A DNA stretch of 63,868 nucleotides, counting the filler, from Octopus bimaculoides (taxonomy: Eukaryota): assembly GCF_001194135.2 (NCBI RefSeq). It is 5 parts of 5 records of this genome, joined end to end, with 100 filler letters (N's around TTAATTAATTAA, not from the genome) between each part and the next. Parts side by side here need not be neighbours in the genome. Positions count along the whole stretch, not along the records: positions 1 to 14,084 come from NC_069008.1; 4 more parts are not named here. One strand, written 5' to 3'. The notes beneath the pieces were generated by a model, which saw nothing but the letters and a program-made list of their open reading frames with translations, had not been told where the DNA came from and did no database searches. Below, piece after piece: positions 1-18,899 of this stretch (position 1 is its first letter; the number at the start of each line of letters is the position of its first letter). The position numbers and the translations under genes are program-made.

Positions 1-21
1 TGGCTATTTTTAGAATTGATG

Positions 22-61
<40 letters not shown>

Positions 62-675
62 TCGACTAAAACCCTTAGAGCGGTGCCCATTCATGGCAGC
101 AATCAAATGACTGAAACAAATAAAAGAGATAAATGTGTGTGTGTGTGTGTCTGTTTTTGTTTCCTAGTGTCACTTGACAACCGATGCTGGTGTGTTTGTG
201 TCCCGTAATTTGTAAGTGTATTTGGTGGACGGAAACTGAAAACCTTATTGTGTTTCTATGCGTGTGTCTGTGTTTGTCTCCCGCTGCTACTTGACAACCG
301 GTGCTGGTGTGTTTACGTCCCTGCAACTTAGTGGTTCAGCAAAACAGACCGATTGATTAAGTACTGAGCTTCAAAACAAATAACTACTGGGTCAGTTCTT
401 CAAAGCAATGCTCCAGCATGTCCGCAGGCTAATAGATAGTAATAGAAGTAATAGATAACATATAACGTAATTGTTTTTTAGAATTGTGTCTCGAAATACA
501 ATTAAGCTATAAATAATAACGTAAATACTGGATTGAAAAACTCTTTTAGATAGAAAAAGACGTGTCTGTGTGTGTCTCTCTCACTACCTCTCTTTCTCCC
601 ATCTTTCCTACCCATGCTTCCAACATACCACTTTGTTCTTTCTCTCATCACTTTTCCTCCTACTTTTTCCCTTCT

Positions 676-714
676 TTTTTTCTGATGAAGGACTACTGTC
701 TGAAATGTCAAAGG
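676..714 (+). ncRNA. Minimal type-I hammerhead ribozyme motif (Penelope-type repeat)
   Basis: TTTTT-CTGATGA-A-GGAC-tact-GTCT-GAAA-TGTC-AAAGG: conserved core, stem II, GUC site. Helix III ACGT palindrome appears decayed to ATGT. Confidence 0.65.
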
Positions 715-991
715 CTCTTTCTTCTTCCTTCCAAGTGTTACACTAATAACACCTCTGTTAAAACTTGTCCTTCTTGTTTCATCTTTTCCTTATTTTTGCT
801 CGTTGCCTAACACCCACACTCATACACAATGAGCTTCTTTTAATTTCTATCTACCAAATCCATATCTATTATAGCTTCACTCAATCCAGAGTTATAATAC
901 AAGACATTCACCCAAGGTGCCATGCTGCACCATGTGGTTGGGAATCAAACATCTCAGTCACACAGCCATGGCTGCATTTGTACAAATATCA

Positions 992-1872
992 ATCATAGGT
1001 CTGGTGGATCAGGACTGACCTGGGGCTAGAATGACAGCAACAAGGAAGGACACATTAAATAATGTAGTCCTAGATACACAATGTGTGAGAATAAAAGTGA
1101 GAAGGTCACAGTTAGAACACCTTTGATCATAGGTCTGAGGGATCAGGACTGGCCTGGGGCTAAAACCACAGCAAGAACCAACAATAACAATGAAAGATGT
1201 TCGTTATTGAACTCAGTAATTGCTAATTAATTAGTCAATTATTTCCTCACTCATTTAATAAGTCTCTTGTCTGTTTATCGAAGAGTTATAAGAGACCATC
1301 AAGGGAACTTGCAAGAACACACTGGTTGTCTTTAGTGAAGGTCACACAGGTGATTGTTTCTGGAAGCAGAGATGTTGGAAAATGCATGAAGAGGGATTGC
1401 ATCTGCACCCAAACTATAACAATGTGTAACAAAATTTTAATTTTCTTTTGTCTTTGGTCAGTGAGTGTTATTTCTTATTTTCTTCTGTCTAGAAATCAAA
1501 GGAAATGACTATCATTCCCTTCAAACTTTGCTTTTGTAAAACTGACCTATTTTCCATTACATTTCAGACAGATTCAGCACTGAGTTGCCGAAGCAGAAAT
1601 ATCATTATAGCTAATACTCTGCTCAATACCACAGATTTGCTTGTCAGTTGCTTGACCATAATCACTTTAGCATGACCCTTAGTGGCTGACAATATGTGCA
1701 TCTTTGATGATGAGCAGAAGTAGTGGGGGAGCATTACAGCCTTGTGTTGAGAGGGATTCTTTAGGGCTTGAATAAATGTAACAAAAGCAAAGTTTAAAGG
1801 AAATATTAGTCATTTTTCATACTTCCTTGGACTAAACAAACAGGAAATAACAGTTGCTACCCAAGAACAAAA
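992..1872 (-). repeat. Left arm of ~0.9-kb inverted duplication (partner ~12270-13186)
   Basis: Read by eye, the reverse complement aligns collinearly with 12270-13186 across intron, exon and flanking repeat units. Boundaries approximate. Confidence 0.88.
1251..1359 (-). pseudogene. Antisense pseudo-exon copy of WDR83 exon 12824-12932
   Basis: Reverse complement is 101/109 identical to the exon, keeps ag|...|gtgagg, and has CGA>TAA (…DGLL*LFDKQTRDLLNE). Confidence 0.92.
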
Positions 1873-1953
1873 ATTATATTATATATTGTTATTTCATGGA
1901 TTGATTAATTAACTAATTAAATACTTAAATTTTCTTTTTCTCATGCCAACCAG

Positions 1954-2178
1954 CTGACGGAGAATATTGCATAAGCTGCGGTAGTGACAAGACTTTAAAA
2001 CTGTGGAACCCCTACCGACAGTTACATCTGAAGACATATTCTGGCCATGGTTATGAAGTCCTTGATGCCCACTCAGCCTGCGACAATGCCACACTCTGTT
2101 CTGGTGGTATGGATAAATCGGTGATCCTTTGGGATGTGGCAACAGGGCAAATGAAGAGGAAGTACAGAGGACATGCAG
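1954..2178 (+). CDS. WDR83: WDR83/MORG1 internal coding exon (phase 1 to phase 1)
   Basis: ccag| acceptor, |gtatga donor. Translates xDGEYCISCGSDKTLKLWNPYRQLHLKTYSGHGYEVLDAHSACDNATLCSGGMDKSVILWDVATGQMKRKYRGHA, matching recalled human WDR83 (DGNYCLTCGSDKTLKLWNP...YSGHGYEVLDA...KFRGHA). The upstream exon is not in the window. Confidence 0.95.
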
Positions 2179-2603
2179 GTATGATGGTGGATGTGGTGTG
2201 GTGGTTGTGTTGTGTTAAGGTGATGCTGATTGTGGCTATGTGCTGGGGTTGATGTAATTGACTCATCCCTTCCCCCAAATTTGGGGCTTTGTGGTTCCAG
2301 TAGAAAGGATTATTATTATTGTCATTGGTGAGAATAAGAACAAACTCTGGTTTGTTCTTACTCCTGGTAGAATTTATGTAACGGGTTACTACCTGTAACT
2401 TTAGGTGTCTACAAGCTTTCAACAATTTTTCAAGTGCTTAAGACCTTGGTAATCTTTCCTGTAGAAGCTCTTACAAGACATTCTATTCCAATTTTCTTCA
2501 ACCATTTGTCTATATCTTAACTCACAGTTCCTAATGCACTGTTTATTATAAGCACAACCCTTACAGTTTTCATACTCCATATTCTTGCAATTTCAAATTT
2601 TAA

Positions 2604-2823
2604 CCCTTTAGCATTCAGATTTGTTTGTTAAATGTAATGTTTATTTATTCAAATTGTTTTGAATTAGTCATGCATTACCTTGTAGCTTTGAGATTTCTGT
2701 GATGTGAATGTTTATTTTTTGGATAATATTGTAAGGTAAGTGTGAGAGGCTGGATCTGGCTAGTTTGAAGATAAAATAGGTAGATCATTTTGGCCAGTTA
2801 TGGCCAGTTTAAATACTAAAGGG
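2604..2823. mobile_element. piggyBac-type MITE
   Basis: TTAA|CCCTTTAGCATT...AATACTAAAGGG|TTAA: TTAA target duplication, CCC/GGG ends, 220 bp. Confidence 0.8.
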
Positions 2824-2986
2824 TTAAGGGATTGTATGTTTGTTTTCAGTACTCTTTCTTTGCAATCCTGGAGTTATTATTATTATTATGTTGTATTTTT
2901 TTTCTTCTTTCTTCAAATTTTCTTCCATTTCTTGCCGAGTATTTTCCATTATTATTATTATTATTATTATTATCATTATTATTATT

Positions 2987-3190
2987 GAAGGCAGAATCAT
3001 TAACATGCCAGGCAAGATGCTTACTGGTATTTCGTCTGCTGCTACGTTCTGAGTTCAAACTCTGCTGAGGTCGACTTTGCCTTTAATCTTTTCATGGTCA
3101 ATAAAATAAGTACCAGTCAAAAACTGGGGTTGATATAGTGGACTTAAACCCTCCCCCAAAATTGCTGCCCTTGTGACAGAATTTGAAACC
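2987..3190 (+). mobile_element. SINE family A copy with (ATT)n tail
   Basis: ggcagaatc.ttagca...gagttcaaa.tctgc.gaggtcgactttgcc...aagtaccag...ggggtcgat. Further copies at ~3791-3995, ~4530-4745, ~13612-13748 and ~62225-62280 (-). Confidence 0.8.
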
Positions 3191-3214
3191 ATTATTATTA
3201 TTATTATTATTATT

Positions 3215-3748
3215 GAGTGAGAGAGCAGCACATGCCATCAAAGTGACACTGGAGTACAAATATATGAATCCTAATATACCCATCATGATTACCCATCTGA
3301 TAAGGGCGCACCTGGCTCATGCATCCCAACGAAATGTGTCTGACATGGTGATCTCATATCAAAATAAACAGCACATGATCTTGCAGGTGGGGCCCAGTTA
3401 CAATATTGTTCAGTTCGATTAACCCATCCCGTTTAAAAAGTCTTTGAATAAGGTTTGTTTAAGGATGGTGAATGAAACACCCATATTTCCAGAAGTGAAT
3501 TATTCAAACCCCAAGGAATTCCTCTCAACACATGTCTATGGTATTCCCCCATGTGCATATTGTCAGCCACTAAGGGACGTCCTCAACTGGTTACGGTGAA
3601 GCAACTGATGAGCAAATCTGTGGTATTGAGCAGAATGTTTGGTATAGCCCATCTTGTATACCAAGACAAAACAATGTACATGACAACACTTCCAGTCACT
3701 TAAGATCAGAAGCCATCAGAGCCACTGCCTGGAACTGCATCAGGGCAA
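3215..3748 (-). mobile_element. Non-coding ~530-bp interspersed element (here called X) inserted in (TAA)n
   Basis: Second copy at 4013-4470, fragments at ~1600-1775, ~12370-12545 and 16429-16493. Full copies are bounded on both sides by TAT/CAT repeats. No ORF or tRNA head seen. Confidence 0.7.
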
Positions 3749-4012
3749 TTATTATCATGATTGTTGTTGTTATTATTATTATTATTATTATGGCGAACTG
3801 GCAGAGTCGTTAGCATGCTGGGTGAAATGCTTAGTGGTACCTCACCTATCACTACAATATAAGTTCAAATTCTGCTGAGATCGACTTTGCCGTTCATCAT
3901 TTTGGAGTTGATAAATTAAATATCAGTGAAACACTGGGGTCGATATAATCAACTTGTCCCCTCCTCACAAATTTTGGGCCCTTTGCCAACATTTTAAATT
4001 ATTATTATTATT

Positions 4013-4470
4013 GAGTGAGAGAGCAGCACATACCATCAAAGTGACACTGGGGTGAAATATATGAAGTCCAATATACCCATCGAGACTACCCATCTGATAA
4101 GGGCACACCAGGCACATGCTCCACAACCATATGCGCGCAACATGGTGATCTCATATCAAAATTAACAGCGCGTGACCTTGCAGGTGGGGCCCAGTTAGAA
4201 TTTTCTTCAGAAGCTGAATTATCCATGCCCCAAAGAATTCCTCTCAATGCATGGCTATGATGTTCCCCCACTACTTCTGCTCGTGATCAGAGAAGCACAT
4301 ATCGTCAGCCACCGAGGGTCAAACAACTGACAAGAAAATCTGTGGTATTGATCAGAATATTTGCTGTAACCAGTCTTTTATACCAAGACAAAACAGTGTC
4401 CATGATAACACTTCTAATCAGTTAAGATCAAAACCCATGAGAGCCACTGCTTGGTACTGCATCAGGGCAT
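4013..4470 (-). mobile_element. Element X, second copy (internal deletion)
   Basis: Same ends as 3215-3748 (gagtgagagagcag...gcatcagggca). Confidence 0.7.
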
Positions 4471-4837
4471 TCATCATCATCATCATCATTATTAGTATTA
4501 TTATTATTTTCATCATTATCATCATTGTCAAGGCAACAAGCTGGCAGAATTATTGGCCAGACAAAAGGTTTAGTAGCATTTCTTCCAGATTTATGTTCTG
4601 CATTCAAATACTGCCGAGGTTGACTGGCTTTTCATTCTTTCGGGGTTGATAAAATAAGTACTAGTCAAGTATTGATGATGGTCAGTGGAGTCGACTAAGC
4701 TCTGCTCCAACAAAACCATTTCAGGCCTTGTGCCTATAATAGAAAGGATCATTATCATCATCATCCTCATCATTATTAATTTTATCATCATCATCATCGC
4801 TTTTGTTATTATTTTTATGTCCCTTGAACATCAACAG

Positions 4838-4950
4838 GTACTGTTAGCTGTGTAAAGTTCAATGAGGAGTCAACAGTTATTTTATCTGGTTCCGTCGATG
4901 GAACCATTCTCTGCTGGGATTGTCGCAGCCGAAAGTCAGAACCTATCCAG
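4838..4950 (+). CDS. WDR83: WDR83 internal coding exon (phase 1 to phase 0)
   Basis: caacag|...CAG|gttggt. Translates GTVSCVKFNEESTVILSGSVDGTILCWDCRSRKSEPIQ (human GKVNTVQFNEEATVILSGSIDSSIRCWDCRSRRPEPVQ). Phase matches the previous exon. Confidence 0.95.
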
Positions 4951-5104
4951 GTTGGTTGTTCTACCTCAGTTTTTTACCCCTCACACTTATCTATTTATCT
5001 CTCTATTTGTTTGTCTATCTGCCTTTGCGTCTGTCTGCTTATCTATGCACCCATTTGTCTATCTGTCAATGTCTGTTTATATATTTGTCTCCCTCTTATT
5101 ATCA

Positions 5105-5490
5105 TAAACATCATCATCATCAATATGTTACATCCGTTTTCCATGCTGGTATGGGTCAGACACTTTGACTGGAACTGGTAAGCCAGAGAGCTGCACCAAG
5201 CTCTTGTCTGATTTGGCATCGTTTCTACAACTGGATGCCCTTTCTAGTACCAACCACTCCAAAAATGTAATGGATGCTTTTTATGTGCCACCATCACAGG
5301 TGCCAGTTACGTGACACCAGCATTGGCCATGACCATGATATCACTTGGCTTGACGAGTCTTCTCAAGCATGGCATATTGTCAAAGGCCTTGGTCACTTGT
5401 CACTGTCTCTGTGAGGCCCAACATTTGTAAATCATGCTTTGCCACCTCATCCCATGTCTTCCTGGGTCTACTGCTTCCACAGTTAGAGAT
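5105..5490 (-). mobile_element. 5'-truncated RTE LINE 3' end with (GAT)n tail
   Basis: RPRKTWDEVAKHDLQMLGLTE...LEKTRQAK*, then a 3'UTR ending in the tail. Confidence 0.8.
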
Positions 5491-5589
5491 CAGTATTTCT
5501 TTATACAGCTATCATTTTATATTAGTTTATGTGTGTTATATAAATATATATAAACTCTCTCTCTTTCTCTCTCTCTCTTACACACACAC

Positions 5590-5790
5590 ACACACGTAAT
5601 CATCATCTTCCATGTGGCATAGGTTAGTTGATTTGACAGGATCTGGTGAGCTACAGGGCTGTCTCATGCTCCATGTCAACTTTGGCATAGTTTCTACAGT
5701 TGAATGCCAGTCATAACATCTACCACTTTGCAGTGTGTATCAGATGCTTTTTTTCATACGACCAGCATTAGTAGGGTTGCCAAATAACAT
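5590..5790 (-). mobile_element. RTE-type 3'UTR fragment
   Basis: Similar to the 3'UTR of 5105-5490. Confidence 0.55.
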
Positions 5791-6399
5791 GCAAGACCAG
5801 AAAGAAGAAGAAAAGGAAAAGCTCTTTCAACTAAGTGGGGGAGAAATTGAAGGGTATTTATGCTAGGGACAAGCAGAGGTGGCTTGCTATGGATAAGATG
5901 TATGGCTACTTCACATTTATGTAAGGGCTGGAAGGAGAATCTGGGAAAAAGTTAAGATGGCAGTGATGGGTTGCCAGAGCAAAATGCTTAGGAAGTGAGA
6001 GATAATACAGGCTGTGAATGAGGTGGGGATAGTAATAGATGGCTGGATGCTGGGTTTGAGATGAATGTAATGAATGATGAACAGGAGTGTAAGTGCAGCT
6101 TGATGGGAAATATCAGTGTAGGCCAGGGTTAGTAAGAGAGAGATAAGAGTGGTGCAGGGATGATAGTTGAGAGAGTAAATGATGATGAGCAAGGCATGGT
6201 AGCAGTGGAGAGAAGGAGATGTAGAGGATTGTTGGCAGACAAGAGGGGCTGGCGCTATGAATGATAGCAGATATGTAAGGTGTTAAGATAAAGCATGGCA
6301 GAAGGAATGAAGAGGCAGAATAACATCTGAGAAGAGATGGAAGTGGTGGAGAAAGAAGGGAGGAATTGGTAGCACAAAGAATTAGGAGATGTGGTATGT

Positions 6400-6740
6400 T
6401 GTTACGATCAGACAAATTAATAATGTAAGAAAAAGGGGTAACTTTCTGATCGCAACAACAAAGTGTTCAAACAGGGAAGTAAATGTTCATATATGGAGAT
6501 TAGGTCCAGTCTCAAAGGTTTCAAGGTAAGTGGTGAACGGTCCGACCCGTATGCAGCTCCGTCTCTCGTTCTGGTTCTATTCGCGCCAAGCTCCTGCTGT
6601 CTTCCCCACTCCCCTTTTTAACAGGAAGTACGAGATTACCTGCCTTACTTGTTAACAAGAAGTGAACGAGATTACCTGTCTCGTACTATTGCTAACTTCC
6701 TGTGTATATCTTTGGTTATTCATACCAACGTTATTTCATT
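6400..6740. mobile_element. Possible solo LTR
   Basis: Begins TGTTAC, ends near ..TTTCA, GC-richer than flanks, internal duplication acgagattacctg. No clear target site duplication. Confidence 0.22.
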
Positions 6741-6984
6741 TCTACCAAGCAGTCATTGACAAACGTTTATCTCGCCACCTTTGGAAAATATAGGGTAAGT
6801 TCTCACACTTCATTATCTTATCAGAATACATAACAATGTGTAAAGGAGGGGTGGTTGAGTTGTGGGGAATGCTTAATGGGGCAACATGGGAGTAGGAACA
6901 GTGTCCAGTATGTAGGAGAAGGGGAGGTATGACAGAGCAGTATAGGTGTAGGAACAACATCTAGCAAGTACAAGCATAGGCAGA

Positions 6985-7265
6985 ATTTTTTTAGGATCTC
7001 ATATTTGCTGTTATGAATGGGTGTTGAGCACAGTGAATCACCAATTGTTGTTGTCTTTTGTTAACTCATCCATGAGGCTCACTATCTTGAGATCAGCCTT
7101 CACTACTTCATCCCCTATCTTCTTGGGTATTCCTCTTCCACAAGTTCCATCCATTTTAAGTGACAGGACTTTTTTATGCAGCTGACCTCACCCACAGCTA
7201 TCACATAACCATATCAGCACAGTATTTTCTCTGGCACACTACATCTGATGCCTCTCATACTTATT
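6985..7265 (-). mobile_element. RTE LINE C-terminal fragment
   Basis: RGIRCSV...SCIKKVLSLKMDGTCGRGIPKK..DEVVKADL. Confidence 0.72.
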
Positions 7266-8450
7266 GAAAATATTTGAATGTAATTTCTACTGTACTTCTT
7301 CTTGGAAAGTATCAAAAAAATGGAATATTTTGATACCACATTTGTGGAATTTGGCTGAATATTTTAGGAAATATAAGAATTTGAATGGTCAGCGAGCTGG
7401 TTGAAATTTTGCCTAATTTGTGTAAATGAATAGGTAGCTATATTTGTGATGTCATATCTTTGAAACTGTGATGACAATCATGTTCAAATTACACAAATTA
7501 ATAGTGGCTATGATACAGTAGTTGTCTATTTATTTTTCAGGTTCTTGGAAAGAAAACCTTTTATCTTTGGCAATATTTTAAATATTTATATAAAGCCTAT
7601 TTTGTTATGTAAAACAAATGGTTAGTTTTACAGTGTTTTCAGACCAAACTAAATCTCAAATCACAAGCCATAGAAATTTGAGTTTTGGCATGTTAATAGT
7701 AGGTATGGAGGTAAATAAATCAGGAGATTTTGGGACATGACACCATTTCAATAAAATTCTAACAGATTATTAAAAATGGTTATAAATCACAGAATTTCAG
7801 ATCAGGACGCCCATATGAGTTGTATTTTCTACATTTTGACTGGGATTTCCTCCATTTTTTCTCATCACAGCCTTGGAAATGTTGGGGTAAAGTTTTTTAT
7901 GAAATAAAGTTTTGTAAGATTTGTGATTATTTTTGTTTTACATCCACCCACTGTCCAGAGCAGTTTAGGCCAATTTTTGTTCGCTAGGCAGAAGCCTTTA
8001 TTGCAGGAAAAAACAATTATAAAACTATCTTGAGACAAAAAGGTATGTGATTTAGAGAGATTTAGCTACTGTTTCTAGCACATCCTACAATGACCTGGTA
8101 ACACGCTAGAAACTGCAGCGAAATCTCTCCTTAAATCACTGCTTTTTGACTCAAAATATTTTGATAAATGTTTTTCTTCCTGCTATAAAGGCTTCTCATT
8201 GCTATTAAAGTGCCTAGTGCAAACAAAATTGGTTTGGTGAGGAGAGGGGGTAAAAAAGATCATAAATTTTAAAAAATTTTGTTTCCTAAAACGCACCCCT
8301 CTCTTCATTTTTAAGGCCGCAGTGAAAAAAATAAAATAGGAAAAATTTCCGCAGTGCTCCAGCATGGCCACAGTCTGAAACCAGTAAAAGAGTCAAAATG
8401 AAGAAAATCCAACTTATGTGGGCGTCCTTGTCCAAAACTCACTCCTACAA
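7261..8450. repeat. AT-rich non-autonomous DNA-transposon-like repeat in imperfect fold-back arrangement
   Basis: 7261-8010 is a diverged reverse complement of ~33000-33770, and 8170-8450 resembles ~33020-33300 directly. A ~95-bp hairpin (8046-8141) lies between the arms. Confidence 0.55.
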
Positions 8451-9439
8451 ATAATTAAATGAAATTACAGCTATTGCAAGCATTTAATGTATATCCAGAC
8501 ATGATTATATTGTGATCTGTTACCTGTAGGAGGCTCAGTTTTGATACACTGGTATGAGATATAAAACTGAATCTTCTATAACTTTGGAGCTTTACAATAA
8601 ATTTAATAAGTATCCCTGGAAAGCTCTGTGGAAGGGGTGATGCATGCAATTTGACTATGCAAAAATCCATTGTTTTCATGAAAAAATACCTATTTTCATA
8701 GGGAAAATTATATATCATTTGAAAGTTCTATAGTTTTATTCAAAATCAGACACAAAAAAAAGGAAATGATATATAGGTAGATCAGGAGTAGTGTTGGTGA
8801 ATTTTGGGAAGTGTGGCATTTTTTAAGGATGGAATTGTGTCTTAAGTGTCCTGATAGCTGATGCAGTTAGTTTTATTCCATGCTTCAATGATTCTGGGCA
8901 TGAAAAAAGGCTCAAAAAAGCTGCATAAAAATGCCCATGTATTTTTATGTAGTAATTCATCTCTCTTTCTCTCTCCCATTTCCCCCTTCTCTCTCTGAGC
9001 AAGGAGACACCTCACAGCAATCATTCATGCCATCTTTCTGAGGAAAGCTCTTTCTCTTCAATCTCAGAGACCCTGTAAAGGATCAAGGGTACTGATTTCA
9101 GGCAGTGTTTATCCCCACTTTAACATGTGTGTTTTCTAAGAGACTGCAATTTTAAGTCCAGGAAGACATCTCCTCCAACTGGTTTATTCAGTGCTCTCTC
9201 TGCACTCAATATTTATTGCAAGTGGGAGATAACTCCTGCCATCCTAGCTTTGAGACCACTAAACCATATGATTTCAATCTAATTGGATCTCTTTGGTAGT
9301 GGGCCCCTGTTTGCCAAGCCAGGCAATAGTTTAAACTTGCAATATACAGAAAATACATGTCATACAATCATGTCATACACTGACTTTGTAACTAGCACAT
9401 AAAAATCACCCTTTGAAAGTTGGGTAATATGTTGTGTTT

Positions 9440-9660
9440 GAGAAGATCCGTCAAGCCAAGTGGAATTGTAATCGTGGCTGTAAAAAGCACCCACTACACT
9501 CTTGGAGTGGTTGGTGTTAGGAAGGGCATCCAGCTGTAGAGACCATATCAAATCAGATTGGAACCTAGAGCTGCTCCCCAGCTTACCAGTTTTCAGTGAA
9601 ATCATCCAACCCATGCCAGCAGGGAAAGCGGACATTCAATGATGATGATGATGATGATAG
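9440..9660 (+). mobile_element. RTE-type 3' end with (GAT)n tail
   Basis: cgtcaagccaagtg...ggttggtgttaggaagggcatccagctgtag...ccaacccatgccagc...gatgatgat. A shorter copy sits at ~11815-11900. Confidence 0.7.
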
Positions 9661-10302
9661 TAATAAAACTAGTTTGTTAGAAAATCTATTTGAGATAGAA
9701 AGCAGTATATGAACAACCAAAAGGCAATGTTTATCCCCACTTTAACATGAATGTTCTCTAAGAGACGATGATACAGCAATTTTAACCCCAGGACTTTCTT
9801 CCTGACAAAAAAGAGCAAAAATAAAACAAAATTACTTTCTCTGCTTTGTAATTTCTCCCCTTCACTCTCTCTTTCGTCCTCTTTTCTACTATATCACTAC
9901 TCTCTCTCTCTCTCCCTCCTTCACCTTTCTTTACCTCCTTCCCTCCCTTTTTCTTGCTATGTACCACTCTCTCAAACTCCATACTCTCTCTATCTCTCTC
10001 TCATTCTTTCCAACTCCTCTCCCTCTCTCTCACTCTATCACTCTTTCTAACACCTCCCTCTCACTCTCTACTACTACTACTCTCCCCAACTCCTTTCTCT
10101 CTTTTTCTACCCCTCACCACATCTGACTCCCCCCTTTCTCCTTTTCTCTCTCTATATACCACTCTCTTCTTTCCACTCTCCCTATCACTCTCTCTTTCTG
10201 ACTTTTCCACTCCATGCTTTACCCACTCTCTCTAATTCCTTTCTCTCTCTCTCTCCCTCACCTTTCTTTATACCTCTCACTCTCTCTCTCTCTCATCTTC
10301 AG

Positions 10303-10435
10303 AAACTGAAAGAGGCCAAAGACAGCATCACATCACTGCAAGTATCGGACCATGAGATTCTCTCTGGATCGGCCGATTCTTACATCAGACGCTATGACTT
10401 GCGGATTGGCCGACTCACCTGTGACTACGTTGGAA
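10303..10435 (+). CDS. WDR83: WDR83 internal coding exon (phase 0 to phase 1)
   Basis: Polypyrimidine tract, ttcag|...A|gtgagt. Translates KLKEAKDSITSLQVSDHEILSGSADSYIRRYDLRIGRLTCDYVG (human TLDEARDGVSSVKVSDHEILAGSVDGRVRRYDLRMGQLFSDYVG). Confidence 0.95.
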
Positions 10436-10469
10436 GTGAGTAACCAGTCATTGTTGTTGCTGTTGTTGT

Positions 10470-11070
10470 GCAGCTCCAGATCCCTCCTTATTCAGCAGAT
10501 CTGTGATTAAAGTTGATCCAGCTGTGACCACAGTGTATCTAGGACTACACTATCTAATGTGTCCTTCTTTGTTGTCAAGCAGCCCCAGAACAGTCCTGAT
10601 CCATCAGATTTATGACTAATGTTGATCTGACTGTGCAAAAATTGCTGTCTTCTATTCAGACCTAGTGTATCTCGGACTACACTAACTAATGTGTCCTTCT
10701 TTGTTGTGCAGCCCCAGATTAGACCTGATCCAGCAGATCTGTGATTGAAGTTGATCCAGCTGTGATCATTGTCACCTTTTATTGACATAGTGTATCTAGG
10801 ACTACACTATCTAATGTGGCCTTCCTAGTAGTTGTTGTAACCCTGGTTTGGTCCTAATCCAGCAGCTCTCTGATCAGAGATGTTCCAGCTGTTGTGACCA
10901 TCATGTCTTTTATTCAGGCATAATACATCTAGGACTACATTATCTAATGTGTCCTCTTTTGTTGTGTAGCCCCCCAGCTCAGTGCTGATTCAGCTGACCT
11001 GTGGTCATAATTGTTCCAGATGCGTCTGTCTTTTCTTTTAGAGTATCTCTATGGTGTATCTAGGACTACT
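10470..11070 (+). repeat. ~130-bp tandem repeat, about 5 diverged units
   Basis: Anchor gtgtatctaggactac at 10533, 10665, 10790, 10923 and 11054 (periods 132, 125, 133, 131). Same unit at 992-1165 (-) and 13035-13186. Confidence 0.85.
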
Positions 11071-11325
11071 TTTCACACACCATCATCGGTATATGTAGGT
11101 GTATCTATATGCATGTGTGTAATTTTATGTGTGCGTCAATGTGTGTGTGTGTATTAGGTTTGTATGTGTATTATAGATGCAGACGTAGGTATGTGATAAG
11201 ATGCTTGCTTTCCAACCACATGGTTCTAGGTTCAGTCCTTGAGCAAGTGTTTTCTGAAACCAACTTTGGGCCAACCAAAGCCTTGTGAGTGGATTTGATA
11301 GATGGGAACTGGAAGAAGCCCATTG

Positions 11326-11395
<70 letters not shown>

Positions 11396-11640
11396 AAAAT
11401 CAAAATAAGCAACAAGGATATCCAAAGTTAATGCAGTACAACCGTTTCATACAACTCCATTTATTTAAGCAATGTGAACATTACATCAAATGTAAAATGC
11501 TAATTAATAGTGAATTATTTCCTCACTCATTTAATAATTCTCCTGTCTGATGTAATGTTCACATTGCTTAAATAAATGGAGTGTCATGAAACGATCATAT
11601 TGCATTAACTTTGGATATCCTTGTTGCTTATTTTGATTTT
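11396..11640. mobile_element. MITE-like inverted-repeat element (~93-bp arms) carrying a captured WDR83 exon/donor fragment
   Basis: Arms 11396-11488 and 11548-11640 are near-identical reverse complements. 11515-11549 is the exact reverse complement of 12910-12944. Confidence 0.8.
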
Positions 11641-11735
11641 CATCACCTTATTCTGGGATTGTATGGATAATACCATACTTAATTCTGGTGCCTAAACTTA
11701 AGTACCATATTCACCTTGAATCTAAATTTATATAG

Positions 11736-11811
<76 letters not shown>

Positions 11812-12269
11812 GCCTGGTGCAGCCTCTTGGCTTGCCAGTTCTCAGTCAAACCATCCAACCCATGCCAGCATGGAAAGCAGACGTTGATGACAGTGTTGAT
11901 GTTTTTACATCCCCATAACTTAGCAGTTGGGCAAAAGAGACTGATAGAACTAGGCTTAAAAAAATTAGTCCTGGGGTCAATTCATTCGACTCAAAACTCT
12001 TCAATATGATGCCCCAGCTTGGCCACAGTCAAATGACTGAAACAAGTAAAAGATGAAAGATGTATGTATCTGTATATTATGTGTATAATGTATACGCAAT
12101 GTGTACGTGTACATAAATGTGTATGTGTACATGTACATAAATGTGTATTTGTACATGTACATAAATGTGTATGTGTGTAGATACCTATTTGTGTGTATGT
12201 GTCTGTGTGGGTGATGTGTATGTGTTTGAATGTGCATAAGGTATATGAATGATTACACTGTGTAATGTG

Positions 12270-13186
12270 ATTTTTGTCCTAATGTAGCAACTGTTATTGC
12301 CTATTTGCTTACCATTAGAAAGTATGAAAAAATGGCTAATATTTCCTTCAAACTTTGTCTTTGTTAAATTTATTCAAACCGCAAAGAGTCCCTCGTAACA
12401 CATGGCTATCATTCTCCCCAACTGCTCCTACTCATCATCAGAGATGCAGAAATTGTCAGCCATAAAGGGACATGCTCAAGCAGTTAAGGTCAAATAAATA
12501 ACTGACAAACAGATCCGTGGTATCGAGCAGAATATTTGCTATATTTGTGATATTTCTGCTTCAGCAACTCAGCACTGAATCTGAAATGTAATGGAAAATA
12601 GGTCAGTTTCAGAATATTGATGTCCAGGTTACAAAAAAGCAAAGTTTGAAGGGAATAGTAGTCATTTCCTTTGATTTCTAGACAGAAGAAAATACGAAAT
12701 AGCACTCACTGACCAAAGACGAAAAAAAAAATTAAAAAATAAAATAAAATTTTGTTACACAGCATTATAGTTTGGTGTAGATGCAATCCCTCTTCATGTA
12801 TTTTTCATCAACTCTGCTTCCAGAAACAATCACCTGTGTGACCTTCACGAAAGACAACCAGTGTGTCCTTGCAAGTTCCCTTGATGGTCTTTTACGACTC
12901 TTTGATAAACAGACAGGAGAATTATTAAATGAGTGAGGAAATAAGTTACTAATTAATTAGCAGCTATTTAGTTCAATAATGAACATCATTCATTGTTATT
13001 ATTGTTTGTTGCTATTGTTGTTGTTGTTGTTGTTGTCATTTTAGCCCCAGGCCAGTCTTGAACTGTGACCTTCTCACTTTTATTCTCACACATTGTCTAT
13101 CTCGGACCATATCATCTACTGTGTCCTTTCTTGTTGTTGTCGTTTTTTAGCCCCAGGCCAGACCTGATCCAGCAGACCTACGATCA
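12270..13186 (+). repeat. Right (source) arm of the inverted duplication, containing the functional exon
   Basis: See partner 992-1872. Confidence 0.88.
12824..12932 (+). CDS. WDR83: WDR83 internal coding exon (phase 1 to phase 2); last one visible before the scaffold spacer
   Basis: cttccag|...GA|gtgagg. Translates KTITCVTFTKDNQCVLASSLDGLLRLFDKQTGELLNE (human SPITCTCFSRDGQCTLVSSLDSTLRLLDKDTGELLGE). C-terminal exons were not found. Confidence 0.93.
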
Positions 13187-13291
13187 ATTTAATTACCTCT
13201 CTCTATTCCATGCTCCTTCCACATTCAACAGCCTCTCATAATAGTACTTCCATGCCACTTTCTTCTCTTCTATATCAATAGCATGTATGTC

Positions 13292-13510
13292 TACGAGGGG
13301 GGTACTGAAAAGTTCCTGGCTTTGGGTGAAAGAAACTATTGGAGGATCACTTAATTATAATTTTATTCAACATATCCCCCTCTCAGGTTCACACACTTAT
13401 TGCAGTGTCCCTTCAGTTTTTCTAATCCCTGTAAAAGAACTCAGAAGGTTGGGCCTCCAACCAGGCTTTCCCAATATCCTGAAAGCCAGGAACTTTTTTG
13501 CACCCCCTCA
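13292..13510 (-). mobile_element. Mariner-derived MITE
   Basis: ~30-bp TIRs (tacgaggggggtactgaaaagttcctggcttt / aaagccaggaacttttttgcaccccctc). The minus strand keeps a decayed transposase C-terminus (..CNKCVNLRG..VE). Confidence 0.75.
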
Positions 13511-14084
13511 CACACCATTCCAAATTCCCTTCTCATCAATGACATCTTGGTTCCCTCTCACACACTGTCTCACATTCCTGAACACTTCACCCCTTTGATC
13601 CTCATGTGGCACTGAGCTGGCAGAATCATTAGCATGTCAGGCAAAATGTTTAGCAGCATTTCATCTGGCTCTTTATGTTCTGAGTTCAAATTCTGCTGAG
13701 ATCAACTCTGCCTTTCATTGTTTCAAGGTCAATAAGGTAGGTACCAGGAAGACATTTTTGCTTTCTTTATATTTTCTATTTATTATTCTCTATTTTTTCT
13801 TCTCTCTTCTTCCTTTTCTTCCTTCTTCTACCATCCCTAGAAACCCTCTCAAAACAATACAGTAAGAAGTAAACAAGCTTTTAACCCCCCCCCTTTTTTT
13901 TTGACACTCCTTAAAAAGACCATTTCAATACAATGGCCCTTCTCTCTCTCTTTTACCACATCCATCTCTCTATCTGTCTGACTATCAGTCTATCTATCTA
14001 TCTCTCTATCTGCCTGTCTATTTATCTATCTGCTTATACATCTTCCATTGTCTCCAAAGCCTCACCCCCAAAAAACAAAAAAAC

Positions 14085-15526: not shown

Positions 15527-16504
15527 GTATGTGTGTACATGCATAAATACGCACACATATACAAATAGATAGATACATACATACATACATACATACATGC
15601 ATACATATATACATATAAATGTGTATATGTATGGCAGCATATGTAAATGTCAGCATGTATATATATATATCAGTGTCTCTTCTAGTATTTGTGAGAGAAT
15701 GCGTACATGCATCCATGTATGTGTGTCTGGGTGCGGTCGTTCGAGCGCCGTTTGGGTTCATTGTTGCTGTTGAGGACTGACTGGGAGTGAGGGGTTGAAA
15801 AAAAGACATGTAAAGGATTAAATGTACAAAATAAAAGGGGCAATGAAAGGGAATGAGTAAAATAAGGATTGCTTTCAAAATCGAGTTACCATACCCTTAC
15901 CCAGTATTTCACTCATACGCACACTCGTACCCACATATTGACACACATGCAGACATACACACATACACACACAATCAACGCGCGCGCACGGAAGGCAATT
16001 GAATACAGGAAACAAATAAAACCAAGTTTCATCTGATTCACGAACTGTTGTATATGTCTGTATGTTCTTTTGTGTATGTGTGCGTGCGTGTGTATGTTTG
16101 TGTGTGTGTGTGTGCGTGTGTGGGAAAGTGCATGCATGTGTATGTCTCTATGTGTTTGTGTGTGTGTCTGTCTATGTGTCTGTATGCGTCTGAGTGTCTG
16201 TGTGTGTGTGCGTTTGTGTGTGTGCCCAATTCTGGGTGTTTGCATGTATGAATATATTTATATTTCTATATGTATGATACACATACAAACACACACACAT
16301 ATATATACGTACACACATATATAAATATGCACACACACACATATGTATATACATGCACGCATACATACGTACATACATAAATACAGATACGCGCGCGCGC
16401 ATGTATAGAAACAGAAAGCGAAATATTTAACACTTCCATTCAGTTAAGATCAGAAGCCATGAAAGCCACTGCCCGGTACTGTATCAGGGCATTTATTATC
16501 ATCA

Positions 16505-17641: not shown

Positions 17642-18428
17642 AAACAACAATAAATGAATGAATGAGTGAAAGTAAAGACACAGAACAAGCACAATGATAC
17701 AAGAGATTTAGCAGAAAGGTGATGACGAAAGAATGATGGAAACAACAGCAATAAAAACAGCAACAACAATAATAACAATATCATCATCATTAACAACAAC
17801 AATGACCAGCAAAGCAAGGACAAGGACTGTAGTGACGTCAAGAAGACCACCACCACCAACAACAACAACAACAACAACGACGACGACGACGACGACGATG
17901 ACAAAATAGATAGGATCAGTACGAATAAATACAAAAAGAAGTAGCAAAAAGTCTCGAAGAAGAAGAATAATGAAAAACTACTAACAAAAAATAAATACGG
18001 ACAATAACTTGATTGAGAAGAAGAAATTTTAATCTTCTGAATTCTTCTCTATTTAGTTTTTATTTTTATTTCTGTTTATCTTTGGGTAATGTCTGAATTT
18101 AATAGAATCGCCGGGTTTTTTGTTTTCTCTTGTTGTTCTTGTTGTTCTTGCTGTTATTATTATTTTTTTTTTGTGGTGGTTGATGTTGTTCGTCTTTGTT
18201 TTTACGAGGAGAAATGGAGAAATATTTTAAAGAAAATTTTATTTGAAACTAAGTTTAATTTTGTTCCCTAAAAAACGATATATGAAACCTGCGGTAAGAA
18301 ACATTATAAACAAGAAACAGAATAACAACATAAACAACAGCAACAACACAAGACGAAGAGGACAAATGAGAACAGAAAGAAAATCGTTTGACCGGTATTT
18401 TAACCTCCATGAACATCTTAAAACAGAA

Positions 18429-18499
<71 letters not shown>

Positions 18500-18514
18500 A
18501 AGAGAGAGAGAGAT

Positions 18515-18571
<57 letters not shown>

Positions 18572-18899
18572 ATGAGAAGGAGAGGGAAGAAGGGTGATGC
18601 TGAAACGGGGCTAGCCTGATTGGTAAGAAGGGGAGAAATAGTGAGTGAGTAAAGAGAAAAAGAGAATATGGGAGAATAAAAAGAAGGAATTACCTAACAA
18701 GAATTTAAAACACAAGGTGAGAAGTGCAGGAAAGACATTTTTCCTGCTAGTTCAAAGTTGATCTGGGTAGTAGGGAGAGGTTTAGAATAAGTGAGCGGTG
18801 CGATGGAAGAGAAGAAGGAGAGGAAGGAACGAGTGAGGAGTGAGAGATCGAGGAAAGGCACAGATTTTATTGAGAAAAGAGAGAGAGATGGGAAGAGAA

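What the first reader, a model, noticed from the sequence alone, without database searches (positions are those of the whole stretch)
11396..11640. Inverted-repeat element has captured a perfect antisense copy of the host exon end and 5' splice site
Seen: ~93-bp inverted arms (11396-11488 and 11548-11640) enclose a ~60-bp loop, and 11515-11549 is a 35/35 reverse complement of 12910-12944. That target is the last 23 nt of WDR83 exon 12824-12932 plus the GTGAGG donor. The element is ~1.3 kb upstream in the same transcription unit. Inference: in pre-mRNA the arms could fold into a stem that displays the antisense sequence mostly in its loop, where it could mask the U1 site or form an ADAR substrate, a built-in cis-antisense splice switch. 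Skipping this 109-nt exon would shift the frame. A neutral template-switch or Pack-MITE capture is the alternative, but even then the fragment is better conserved than the arms are to each other.
Basis: partly seen in the sequence, partly recalled or inferred. Interest (0 to 1): 0.8.

Follow-up and report, generated by a model that had tools for sequence, protein, structure and literature searches.

The report
Octopus intron hairpin with copied exon end
An intron of the Octopus bimaculoides WDR83 gene holds a hairpin-forming repeat whose centre carries a 52-base backwards copy of the next exon's end and splice site. It looks like an ordinary, decaying DNA-repair scar rather than a built-in splicing switch.

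Summary
Arms 11393-11488 and 11548-11643 are 96 nt and 92% complementary, with a 59-nt loop. Positions 11515-11549 are a 35/35 reverse complement of 12910-12944, the end of the WDR83 exon plus its GT donor. The homology runs to 52/53 nt, with 2 mismatches and 1 indel in the intronic part.

The window is Octopus bimaculoides WDR83. Positions about 992-1897 (minus strand, intron 1) copy 12245-13184 at about 80% identity and include a pseudo-exon with a stop codon.

The hairpin lies in a 1.43-kb block that is missing at the orthologous site in O. sinensis. No other copy of the arms was found.

At every site where the exon copies differ, the loop keeps the ancestral base. The real intron has since changed twice with no compensation in the loop. 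Exact runs of 35-40 nt also occur in the old duplicate and in the arms.

The best reading is a neutral, templated filler insertion at the centre of a palindromic repeat. A functional splice or editing switch is unsupported but not excluded. The anti-donor 13-mer is predicted to sit in an apical loop. RNA-seq would decide.

The parts
11393..11488 (.). Left arm of the inverted repeat (96 nt)
   Evidence: the repeat finder I1, alignment, fold.
11489..11547 (+). Loop between the arms (59 nt). 11489-11497 is a 9-nt spacer; its ATGTAA (11490-11495) repeats the start of the right arm (11550-11555).
   Evidence: The direct repeat was read from the sequence.
11498..11549 (-). Captured fragment: reverse-complement copy of 12910-12962, i.e. 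the last 23 nt of exon D, the donor GTGAGG and 24 nt of intron. Its last 2 nt (TG) are shared with the right arm (junction microhomology).
   Evidence: Local alignment of 52/53 nt, with 35/35 exact at 11515-11549; zero expected by chance.
11521..11533 (+). Anti-donor 13-mer CCUCACUCAUUUA. It is predicted to lie in a 13-nt apical loop closed by the 8-bp stem GAAUUAUU/AAUAAUUC.
   Evidence: MFE and centroid structures. Mean unpaired probability 0.82; 13-bp duplex with the donor is -18.3 kcal/mol.
11548..11643 (.). Right arm of the inverted repeat (96 nt)
12824..12932 (+). WDR83 exon 'D' (109 nt; aa about 188-224 of the 309-aa protein). The donor GTGAGG is at 12933-12938.
   Evidence: tblastn and splice-site reading. 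100% identical to O. bimaculoides WDR83 P0002.
12910..12962 (+). Source segment of the captured fragment (exon end, donor and start of the intron)
   Evidence: Orthologous sequence is present in O. sinensis (L001 18348-18403) and, for the exon, in Argonauta.
992..1897 (-). D': a second, much larger antisense copy of exon D and its flanks, inside intron 1 of the same gene. The pseudo-exon is at 1251-1359 and has a stop. It also carries the 35-mer with 2 mismatches at 1239-1273.
   Evidence: the repeat finder I1, I2, I3, I9, I24. blastn 992-1897 vs 13184-12245: 80% over 956 columns. tblastn shows the stop. Exon 1 lies upstream of the window.
12245..13184 (+). Partner of D': exon D with about 580 nt of upstream and about 250 nt of downstream intron
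   Evidence: Identity profile: 0.91-0.92 over the exon, 0.67-0.81 elsewhere.
10819..12250 (+). 1.43-kb repeat-rich block that holds the hairpin and is missing at the orthologous place in O. sinensis. In O. bimaculoides it is bounded by an imperfect 20-nt direct repeat (10800-10822 and 12251-12273).
   Evidence: Collinear anchors; empty-site alignment; D4 family.
11332..11391 (.). (TA)30 microsatellite that directly abuts the left arm. It is the internal microsatellite of a tRNA-derived SINE copy whose left half is about 11169-11329.
   Evidence: SINE copies from O. sinensis shown.
11739..11798 (.). Second (TA)30 tract, 95 nt to the right of the hairpin. The right half of the SINE follows at about 11876-12066.

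Best explanation
The feature is a selectively neutral structural scar in an intron of Octopus bimaculoides WDR83.

A palindromic repeat of about 190 nt sat in the (TA)n-rich interior of a SINE. Whether its arms are a MITE-type element or a local palindrome is unresolved. Palindromes of this kind tend to break at their centre.

The break was repaired with a templated 'filler' of 52 nt. The filler was copied from the exon D/intron junction 1.36 kb downstream on the other strand. It could instead have come from the older antisense duplicate D' in intron 1, which has the same orientation.

The event left a 2-nt junction microhomology (TG) and a 6-nt flanking direct repeat (ATGTAA).

Since then the arms, the filler and the real intron have drifted at ordinary neutral rates. 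The 35-nt perfect match survives because the target side is exon plus splice donor (constrained) and because the loop happens to have no hit there.

In the pre-mRNA the arms should form a 96-bp stem, a generic ADAR substrate like any intronic inverted repeat. Complementarity of the loop to the donor is a by-product.

Shown here: the anatomy, the direction of copying, absence in O. sinensis, ancestral states in the loop, and lack of compensation.

Inferred: the break-and-repair mechanism, neutrality, and behaviour at the RNA level.
For: 1. Position and junctions. The insert sits at the symmetry centre. The right junction overlaps the arm by TG, and ATGTAA occurs at 11490-95 and 11550-55. The template lies in cis, inverted, 1361 nt away.

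2. Known repair outcomes. Templated and inverted insertions at breaks via microhomology-mediated template switching are documented (PMC11724301, PMC2943611, PMC5728401). So are centre-break revision of palindromes and counter-selection of unspaced palindromes (PMC3300023, which cites Cunningham 2003).

3. Direction of copying. The exon end is conserved at the orthologous site in O. sinensis and Argonauta and encodes the conserved ...DKQTGELLNE.

4. No conservation. Arms and loop have no match in the O. sinensis or Argonauta loci. The 1.43-kb block that holds them is missing between Os 15814 and 15796.

5. Age and decay. At the 4-5 sites where D and D' differ, the loop has the state shared with O. 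sinensis. D itself later changed 2 of 17 intronic bases, which reduced the pairing. The loop's own change is a 1-nt deletion.

6. Statistics. The D' lineage rate is about 5.5% (6/109). That gives P(0 hits in 35 nt) = 0.15 and P(<=1 in 52 nt) = 0.22. Exact inverted runs of 37, 36 and 36 nt occur in D/D', and of 40 and 35 nt in the arms.
Against: - No other copy of the arms could be looked for genome-wide, so whether the arms are a transposon family is open.
- 52 nt is longer than typical polymerase-theta inserts (5-34 nt), although distant templated insertions of this size are known.
- The left junction has a 9-nt untemplated or duplicated spacer rather than clean microhomology.
- The anti-donor 13-mer is predicted to lie exposed in an apical loop. 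That is what a functional design would look like. However, it follows automatically from the source being a small inverted repeat.
- No RNA-seq was available, so an effect on splicing or editing has not been tested.
- The polarity of the 1.43-kb block (gain in O. bimaculoides or loss in O. sinensis) is unresolved.
Confidence: 0.7

Rival explanations
1. Pack-MITE-type capture. The arms are the terminal inverted repeats of a mobile, non-autonomous DNA transposon family. The element picked up the exon fragment during gap repair after excision or transposition, and may have copies elsewhere with or without cargo.
For: The whole element is two long inverted repeats with a short interior, as in hairpin-like MITEs. 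It lies in a TE-rich block that O. sinensis lacks. It abuts (TA)n, a common target of TA-inserting elements.
Against: There is no clean target-site duplication; only an ambiguous CAT/AT at the ends. There is no second copy in about 100 kb of octopod sequence, none in metagenome contigs and none by ORF-based protein search. The 1.43-kb difference from O. sinensis is not a precise empty site for the 251-nt element. At the repair level this rival is mechanistically almost the same as the best explanation.
Confidence: 0.2
2. Functional cis-antisense element. The stem presents the anti-donor sequence in a loop. A kissing interaction with the exon D donor, or a longer duplex when the stem opens, competes with U1. 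This causes regulated skipping of the frame-shifting exon or creates an ADAR editing site.
For: Complementarity is perfect for 35 nt and covers 52 nt (-73.8 kcal/mol). The 13-mer kissing duplex is -18.3 kcal/mol, against -5.1 for a U1-like 5' end. The anti-donor is about 82% unpaired in the predicted ensemble. The element lies in the intron directly upstream, so it is present when the donor is transcribed (inference). The pair meets the >=50 nt, >=80%, within 2 kb criterion used for potential dsRNA in PMC9989829. Long-range pairing is known to modulate splicing (PMC8052449, PMC2724269). Cephalopods edit heavily (PMC9989829).
Against: The element is absent from O. sinensis and Argonauta. Complementarity is decaying without compensation. 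There is no excess conservation. With the -132 kcal/mol stem closed, a loop cannot wind more than about one turn around a distant target, which is too short for ADAR (inference from RNA topology). WDR83 does not appear in the supplementary tables of the metazoan editome paper (a weak negative).
Confidence: 0.07
3. Assembly artefact. A chimeric or fold-back artefact of the short-read assembly created the palindrome and the exon fragment.
For: The window is one contig between N gaps of a short-read-based, Hi-C-scaffolded assembly. (TA)n tracts flank the element.
Against: Artefactual palindromes have identical arms, and artefactual copies are identical to their source. Here the arms differ at 8% of positions, and the fragment differs from its source by 2 substitutions and 1 indel in a pattern that matches the inferred ancestor.
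Confidence: 0.03

Closest known systems
Templated (filler) insertions at repaired double-strand breaks: polymerase-theta/SD-MMEJ and microhomology-mediated template switching; centre-break revision of palindromes
   Same: The insert has an identifiable nearby template in inverted orientation and a junction microhomology. A short direct repeat flanks the insert. It sits at the centre of a palindrome, and the resulting spacer would stabilise the palindrome (PMC11724301, PMC2943611, PMC5728401, PMC3300023).
   Different: At 52 nt it is at the long end for such inserts. The template is 1.36 kb away rather than within tens of bases. The event is inferred from a single fixed genomic copy, not observed.
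Pack-MULE / Pack-MITE style transduplication of host gene fragments by DNA transposons (from general knowledge)
   Same: A host exon fragment lies between inverted repeats, and the copy includes an exon-intron junction, so it was taken from genomic DNA.
   Different: No TSD, no family copies and no evidence of mobility were found. The cargo is far shorter than typical Pack-MULE cargo.
Intronic editing-site complementary sequences (ECS), e.g. GRIA2 Q/R and R/G sites, and conserved long-range complementary regions that regulate splicing (PMC8052449, PMC2724269)
   Same: An intronic sequence is complementary to an exon end or splice site in the same pre-mRNA, at kilobase distance.
   Different: Functional ECS and PCCR elements are conserved and show compensatory change. 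This one is lineage-specific and decaying. It is also enclosed in a hairpin loop, which hinders formation of a long duplex.
Intronic inverted repeats as generic ADAR substrates (IRAlu-like; 'pairing of nearby inverted repeats', PMC9989829)
   Same: The 96-bp arm stem and the 750-bp D'/D pairing are exactly this kind of substrate.
   Different: One partner of D'/D is a coding exon of the host gene itself rather than a transposon copy.

Membership tests
MITE / Pack-MITE (mobile DNA element) | Terminal inverted repeats | tested here: met
   The arms are 96 nt and 92% complementary. This is trivially met, because the element consists of the repeat.
MITE / Pack-MITE (mobile DNA element) | Target-site duplication flanking the element | tested here: inconclusive
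   The ends read ...TATAC|AT[A/G]AAAATC...GATTTTCAT|CACC. Only an ambiguous CAT or AT appears on both sides, and it cannot be told apart from an extension of the palindrome.
MITE / Pack-MITE (mobile DNA element) | Multiple dispersed copies in the genome | not testable with these tools
   No octopus genome search was available. No copy was found in L001-L003, about 100 kb, in metagenome contigs or by protein search of the arm ORF.
MITE / Pack-MITE (mobile DNA element) | Precise empty site in a relative | tested here: not met
   O. sinensis lacks a whole 1.43-kb block bounded by a 20-nt direct repeat, not the 251-nt element alone.
Templated filler insertion at a repaired break | Insert copied from an identifiable template elsewhere | tested here: met
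   52/53 nt match to 12910-12962 on the other strand. The original is conserved in relatives.
Templated filler insertion at a repaired break | Microhomology at the junctions | tested here: inconclusive
   The right junction shares TG with the arm. The left junction has a 9-nt spacer that contains a 6-nt repeat of the arm start. Such short matches can occur by chance.
Templated filler insertion at a repaired break | Location at a break-prone site | tested here: met
   The insert is at the exact centre of a palindrome that lies within (TA)n tracts. That such sites break is taken from the literature (PMC3300023).
Editing-site complementary sequence / functional long-range splice-regulating pairing | Complementarity to the exon or splice site within the same pre-mRNA | tested here: met
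   35/35 exact and 52/53 overall, -73.8 kcal/mol. It lies in the same intron-exon unit.
Editing-site complementary sequence / functional long-range splice-regulating pairing | Evolutionary conservation or compensatory change | tested here: not met
   Absent in O. sinensis and Argonauta. Target intron changes were not compensated.
Editing-site complementary sequence / functional long-range splice-regulating pairing | Observed editing or altered splicing that depends on the element | not testable with these tools
   No RNA-seq access. ORF look-ups in public assemblies found nothing. WDR83 is not in the supplements of PMC9989829.
Known structured RNA gene (miRNA precursor and others) | Match to a curated RNA family | tested here: not met
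   No Rfam family reaches its gathering score anywhere in 1-14084.

The most novel reading that the evidence does not exclude
In O. bimaculoides only, exon D of WDR83 is shadowed by two antisense copies in its own pre-mRNA. One is a 13-nt anti-donor loop on a 96-bp stem in the intron just upstream. The other is a duplicate of about 900 nt in intron 1. Together they could measurably lower inclusion of this frame-shifting exon, or make it a species-specific ADAR hyper-editing target. That would be a natural, recently born cis-antisense regulator in an animal that edits heavily.
Probability: 0.1. Interest if true: 0.65.

Novelty: new member of a known kind. Interest (0 to 1): 0.3.

Why it matters
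If neutral, as the evidence suggests, this is a tidy natural example of a palindrome centre repaired with a templated copy of a nearby exon-intron junction. It also cautions against reading a perfect 35-mer as a sign of selection when one partner is an exon.

Its wider use is as a test case. O. bimaculoides carries two antisense copies of one coding exon inside the same pre-mRNA, and O. sinensis carries neither copy of the exon. Existing RNA-seq from the two species could show directly how much newly arisen intramolecular complementarity changes A-to-I editing and splicing of a coding exon in a cephalopod.

Tried and rejected
- A first protein search with two short exons joined found nothing. 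A 192-aa query built from four exons worked.
- The search for other copies of the arm family failed everywhere it could be tried:
  - blastn and nhmmer against the three octopod loci gave only self matches.
  - An exact 27-mer scan of metagenome contigs gave 0 matches.
  - A protein search with the open frame across the arm and loop found no candidates.
- Look-ups of the exon D read-through ORF and the arm ORF in public assemblies, meant to find raw contigs or transcripts, found nothing on record.
- Rfam found no family in the window.
- No paper mentions both O. bimaculoides and WDR83, and WDR83 is not in the editome paper's supplements.
- Rejected: the exon end derives from a transposon. The sequence codes for conserved WDR83 residues and is present in O. 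sinensis, Argonauta and human.
- Rejected: a fold-back origin in which loop and arm were once contiguous. Neither D nor D' continues into arm sequence.
- Rejected: recent gene conversion keeps the 35-mer identical. The flanking 17 nt have 3 differences, and the loop carries ancestral states, not current ones.
- Rejected as unnecessary: a recent conversion tract between D and D'. The 0.91 (exon) against about 0.8 (flanks) identity profile is what one-sided constraint predicts.

Full report
**1. What is there**

The reported anatomy is correct.
- The arms are 11393-11488 and 11548-11643. They are 96 nt each and 92% complementary, with 59 nt between them. The arm alignment shows six substitutions and an offsetting pair of 1-nt indels.
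- 11515-11549 is an exact reverse complement of 12910-12944.
- A scan allowing 3 mismatches found no match in any of 200 dinucleotide-preserving shuffles.
11498-11549 aligns with 12910-12962, 52/53 nt. The only differences are two substitutions and one 1-nt indel, all in the 17 nt beyond the 35-mer, which is intronic sequence.
- As RNA, 11385-11650 folds into one long hairpin of -132.3 kcal/mol, z = -21.7.

**2. Where it is**

The window is Octopus bimaculoides WDR83 (MORG1).
- A 192-aa translation of four exons is 100% identical to the O. bimaculoides protein P0002. It is 98% identical to O. sinensis and 90% to Argonauta hians.
- The plus-strand exons in the window are A 1954-2178, B 4838-4950, C 10303-10435 and D 12824-12932. 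All have AG/GT boundaries.
- Exon D is 109 nt, so skipping it shifts the frame. Its donor is GA|GTGAGG.
- The window is L002 12131-26214, a contig between two runs of N in the chromosome-scale assembly.
- Exon 1 lies upstream of the window. Window 1-1953 is therefore intron 1.

**3.

The 35-mer has a third copy at 1239-1273 on the minus strand, with 2 mismatches. It is part of a large inverted duplication.
- Window 992-1897 (minus) aligns with 12245-13184 (plus) at 80% over 956 columns.
- This duplicate, D', contains a pseudo-exon at 1251-1359 with a stop codon.
- D' lies in intron 1 and ends only about 60 nt before the acceptor of exon A.
- Exon D therefore already has an antisense partner of about 900 nt in the same pre-mRNA. 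The best duplex has 753 bp and -1089 kcal/mol, against -73.8 kcal/mol for the loop fragment.
- Identity between D and D' is 0.91-0.92 over the exon and the 80 nt before it, and 0.67-0.81 elsewhere. This pattern is expected if only the D side is constrained.
- O. sinensis also has an inverted partner of the region upstream of exon D in its intron 1, at 70-81% identity. It has no pseudo-exon there. Part of the duplication is therefore at least as old as the split between the two species.

**4. Comparison with relatives**

Collinear anchors between the window and the O. sinensis locus L001 are:

| O. bimaculoides (window) | O. sinensis (L001) |
|---|---|
| 10701-10818 | 15697-15814 |
| 12251-12487 | 15796-16033 |

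- The 1.43 kb from 10819 to 12250 has no counterpart in O. sinensis. This block holds a 130-nt tandem array, a tRNA-derived SINE with an internal (TA)n tract, the hairpin, and a fragment of another repeat.
- The junction in O. sinensis is a single copy of a 20-nt motif. In O. bimaculoides that motif flanks the block as an imperfect direct repeat. Gain in O. bimaculoides and loss in O. sinensis are both possible.
- The arms have no match anywhere in about 100 kb of O. sinensis, Argonauta or the rest of the O. bimaculoides locus.
- In Argonauta the corresponding intron is only about 380 nt.
- The hairpin abuts the (TA)30 of a SINE whose two halves are contiguous in O. sinensis copies.

**5. Age and selection**

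I aligned four sequences: D, D', the O. sinensis exon D region and the loop.
- The exon is the original, because it is conserved at its place in all three species.
- At every site where D and D' differ within the 53 nt, the loop carries the base shared with O. sinensis:
  - D' has two private changes in the exon part and one in the intron part.
  - D has two private intronic changes (AATTCAC became AAGTTAC).
  - The loop's only private change is a 1-nt deletion.
- The fragment was therefore copied before the present intron sequence arose. When the target changed, the loop did not follow, so complementarity has decayed without compensation.
- The D' pseudo-exon has about 6 private changes in 109 nt (5.5%). 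The arms differ by 8.3%, or about 4% per arm if they began identical. Orthologous intron identity between the two species is 86-92%. All of these ages are similar.
- At these rates the chance of no change in 35 neutral bases is 0.15-0.35. The chance of at most one change in 52 bases is 0.22-0.36.
- Exact inverted runs of 37, 36 and 36 nt occur between D and D', and of 40 and 35 nt between the arms.
- A 35-nt perfect run is thus ordinary for copies of this age. It falls where it does because the target side is exon plus donor.

**6. How it most likely arose**

- The fragment sits at the symmetry centre of the palindrome.
- On the right, its last two bases (TG) are also the first two of the arm.
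- On the left there is a 9-nt spacer. Its ATGTAA repeats the first bases of the right arm, so the insert is flanked by a short direct repeat.
- Unspaced palindromes and (TA)n tracts are break-prone. They tend to be 'revised' at the centre, which stabilises them (PMC3300023 and the center-break work it cites).
- Breaks are often repaired with templated insertions. These are frequently inverted and are made by microhomology-mediated template switching (PMC11724301, PMC2943611, PMC5728401).
- I therefore infer a centre break repaired with a 52-nt copy. The template was either the exon D junction (1.36 kb away, other strand) or D' (10 kb away, same strand). The data cannot tell which.
- The arms may belong to a MITE family, which would make this a Pack-MITE-like capture. 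This could not be tested. No clean target-site duplication is visible.

**7. What it could do as RNA**

- The stem is a generic 96-bp ADAR substrate.
- Within the loop, the captured fragment forms its own 8-bp stem (GAAUUAUU/AAUAAUUC). This leaves the anti-donor CCUCACUCAUUUA in a 13-nt apical loop. Its mean unpaired probability is 0.82.
- A 13-bp kissing duplex with the donor would be worth -18.3 kcal/mol, against -5.1 for a U1-like 5' end.
- This exposure follows automatically from the source being a small inverted repeat around the donor.
- With the stem closed, the loop cannot wind around a distant part of the same chain for more than about one turn (inference from RNA topology). The 35-52-bp duplex needed for ADAR would require the -132 kcal/mol stem to open.
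- D' has no such topological problem. It lies in intron 1, however, and may be spliced out before exon D is made (inference).
- The loop/exon pair formally meets the criterion for potential dsRNA used in PMC9989829: at least 50 nt, at least 80% identity, within 2 kb.
- No RNA data could be examined.

**8. Verdict**

- The direction of capture is confirmed.
- The functional reading is unsupported.
- The feature is a new member of a known kind: a palindromic repeat with templated filler.
- The most interesting residue is comparative. O. bimaculoides has two antisense copies of a coding exon in cis, and O. sinensis has none. Public RNA-seq could test this directly.

Noticed in passing
window 992-1897 (minus) vs 12245-13184 (plus): Exon D and its flanks are duplicated in inverted orientation in intron 1 of the same gene. 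The copy is about 900 nt at about 80% identity. Its pseudo-exon (1251-1359) has a stop, and it ends about 60 nt before the acceptor of exon A. The two copies could pair over about 750 bp in the pre-mRNA, and they bracket exons A-D like the inverted repeats that promote back-splicing.
   Followed up: partly
L001 10958-11470 and 11785-11837 vs L001 15804-17394: O. sinensis also has an inverted partner of the region upstream of exon D in its intron 1 (70-81% identity), but no pseudo-exon. Part of the duplication therefore predates the species split. The exon part was either lost in O. sinensis or added later in O. bimaculoides.
   Followed up: partly
window 10463-11070; related units at 13061-13187 and 1030-1161: There is a tandem array of 4-5 units of about 130 nt in the intron between exons C and D. 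Single related units lie just downstream of exon D and at the far end of D'. O. sinensis has one unit at 15697-15814 and more at 18507-18673.
   Followed up: partly
window 11169-11329 and 11876-12066; other copies at 134-465; L001 17747-18156, 29183-29812, 6280-6900: These are copies of a tRNA-derived SINE with an internal (TA)n(TG)n microsatellite. The hairpin, 93 nt of unique sequence (11644-11736), a second (TA)n tract and a fragment of another repeat (11813-11885, like 9564-9636) all lie inside the microsatellite region of one copy.
   Followed up: partly
window 12918-12947; L001 about 18356-18385: The exon D donor lies between short inverted repeats (GAATTATT ... AATAATTC). These form 8/8 pairs in the inferred ancestor, 7/8 in O. 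sinensis, and 6 plus a wobble in present O. bimaculoides. The stem is weak and all A-U. It is not predicted as stable on its own and is not seen in Argonauta.
   Followed up: partly
L002 26215-27400 (N gap just after the window): The annotated O. bimaculoides WDR83 protein (274 aa) lacks the exon encoding aa about 225-262, which is present in O. sinensis and Argonauta. It reads ...GELLNDCHQAETK instead. The missing exon evidently falls in the assembly gap, so the gene model is an artefact of the gap.
   Followed up: partly
L002 9782-9871 and 10001-10090; L001 24037-24177 and 24946-25086: Exon 1 appears twice in the O. bimaculoides scaffold, on either side of a 10-N gap, which is probably assembly redundancy. 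The last exon appears twice, with identical protein, about 909 nt apart in a tandem-repeat region of the O. sinensis locus.
   Followed up: no
window 2990-3413 vs 3800-4210, and 3595-3791 vs 4317-4513: Large direct repeats (72-83% identity, spacing 720-810 nt) in the intron between exons A and B. They are built from SINE-like units with (ATT)n tails.
   Followed up: no
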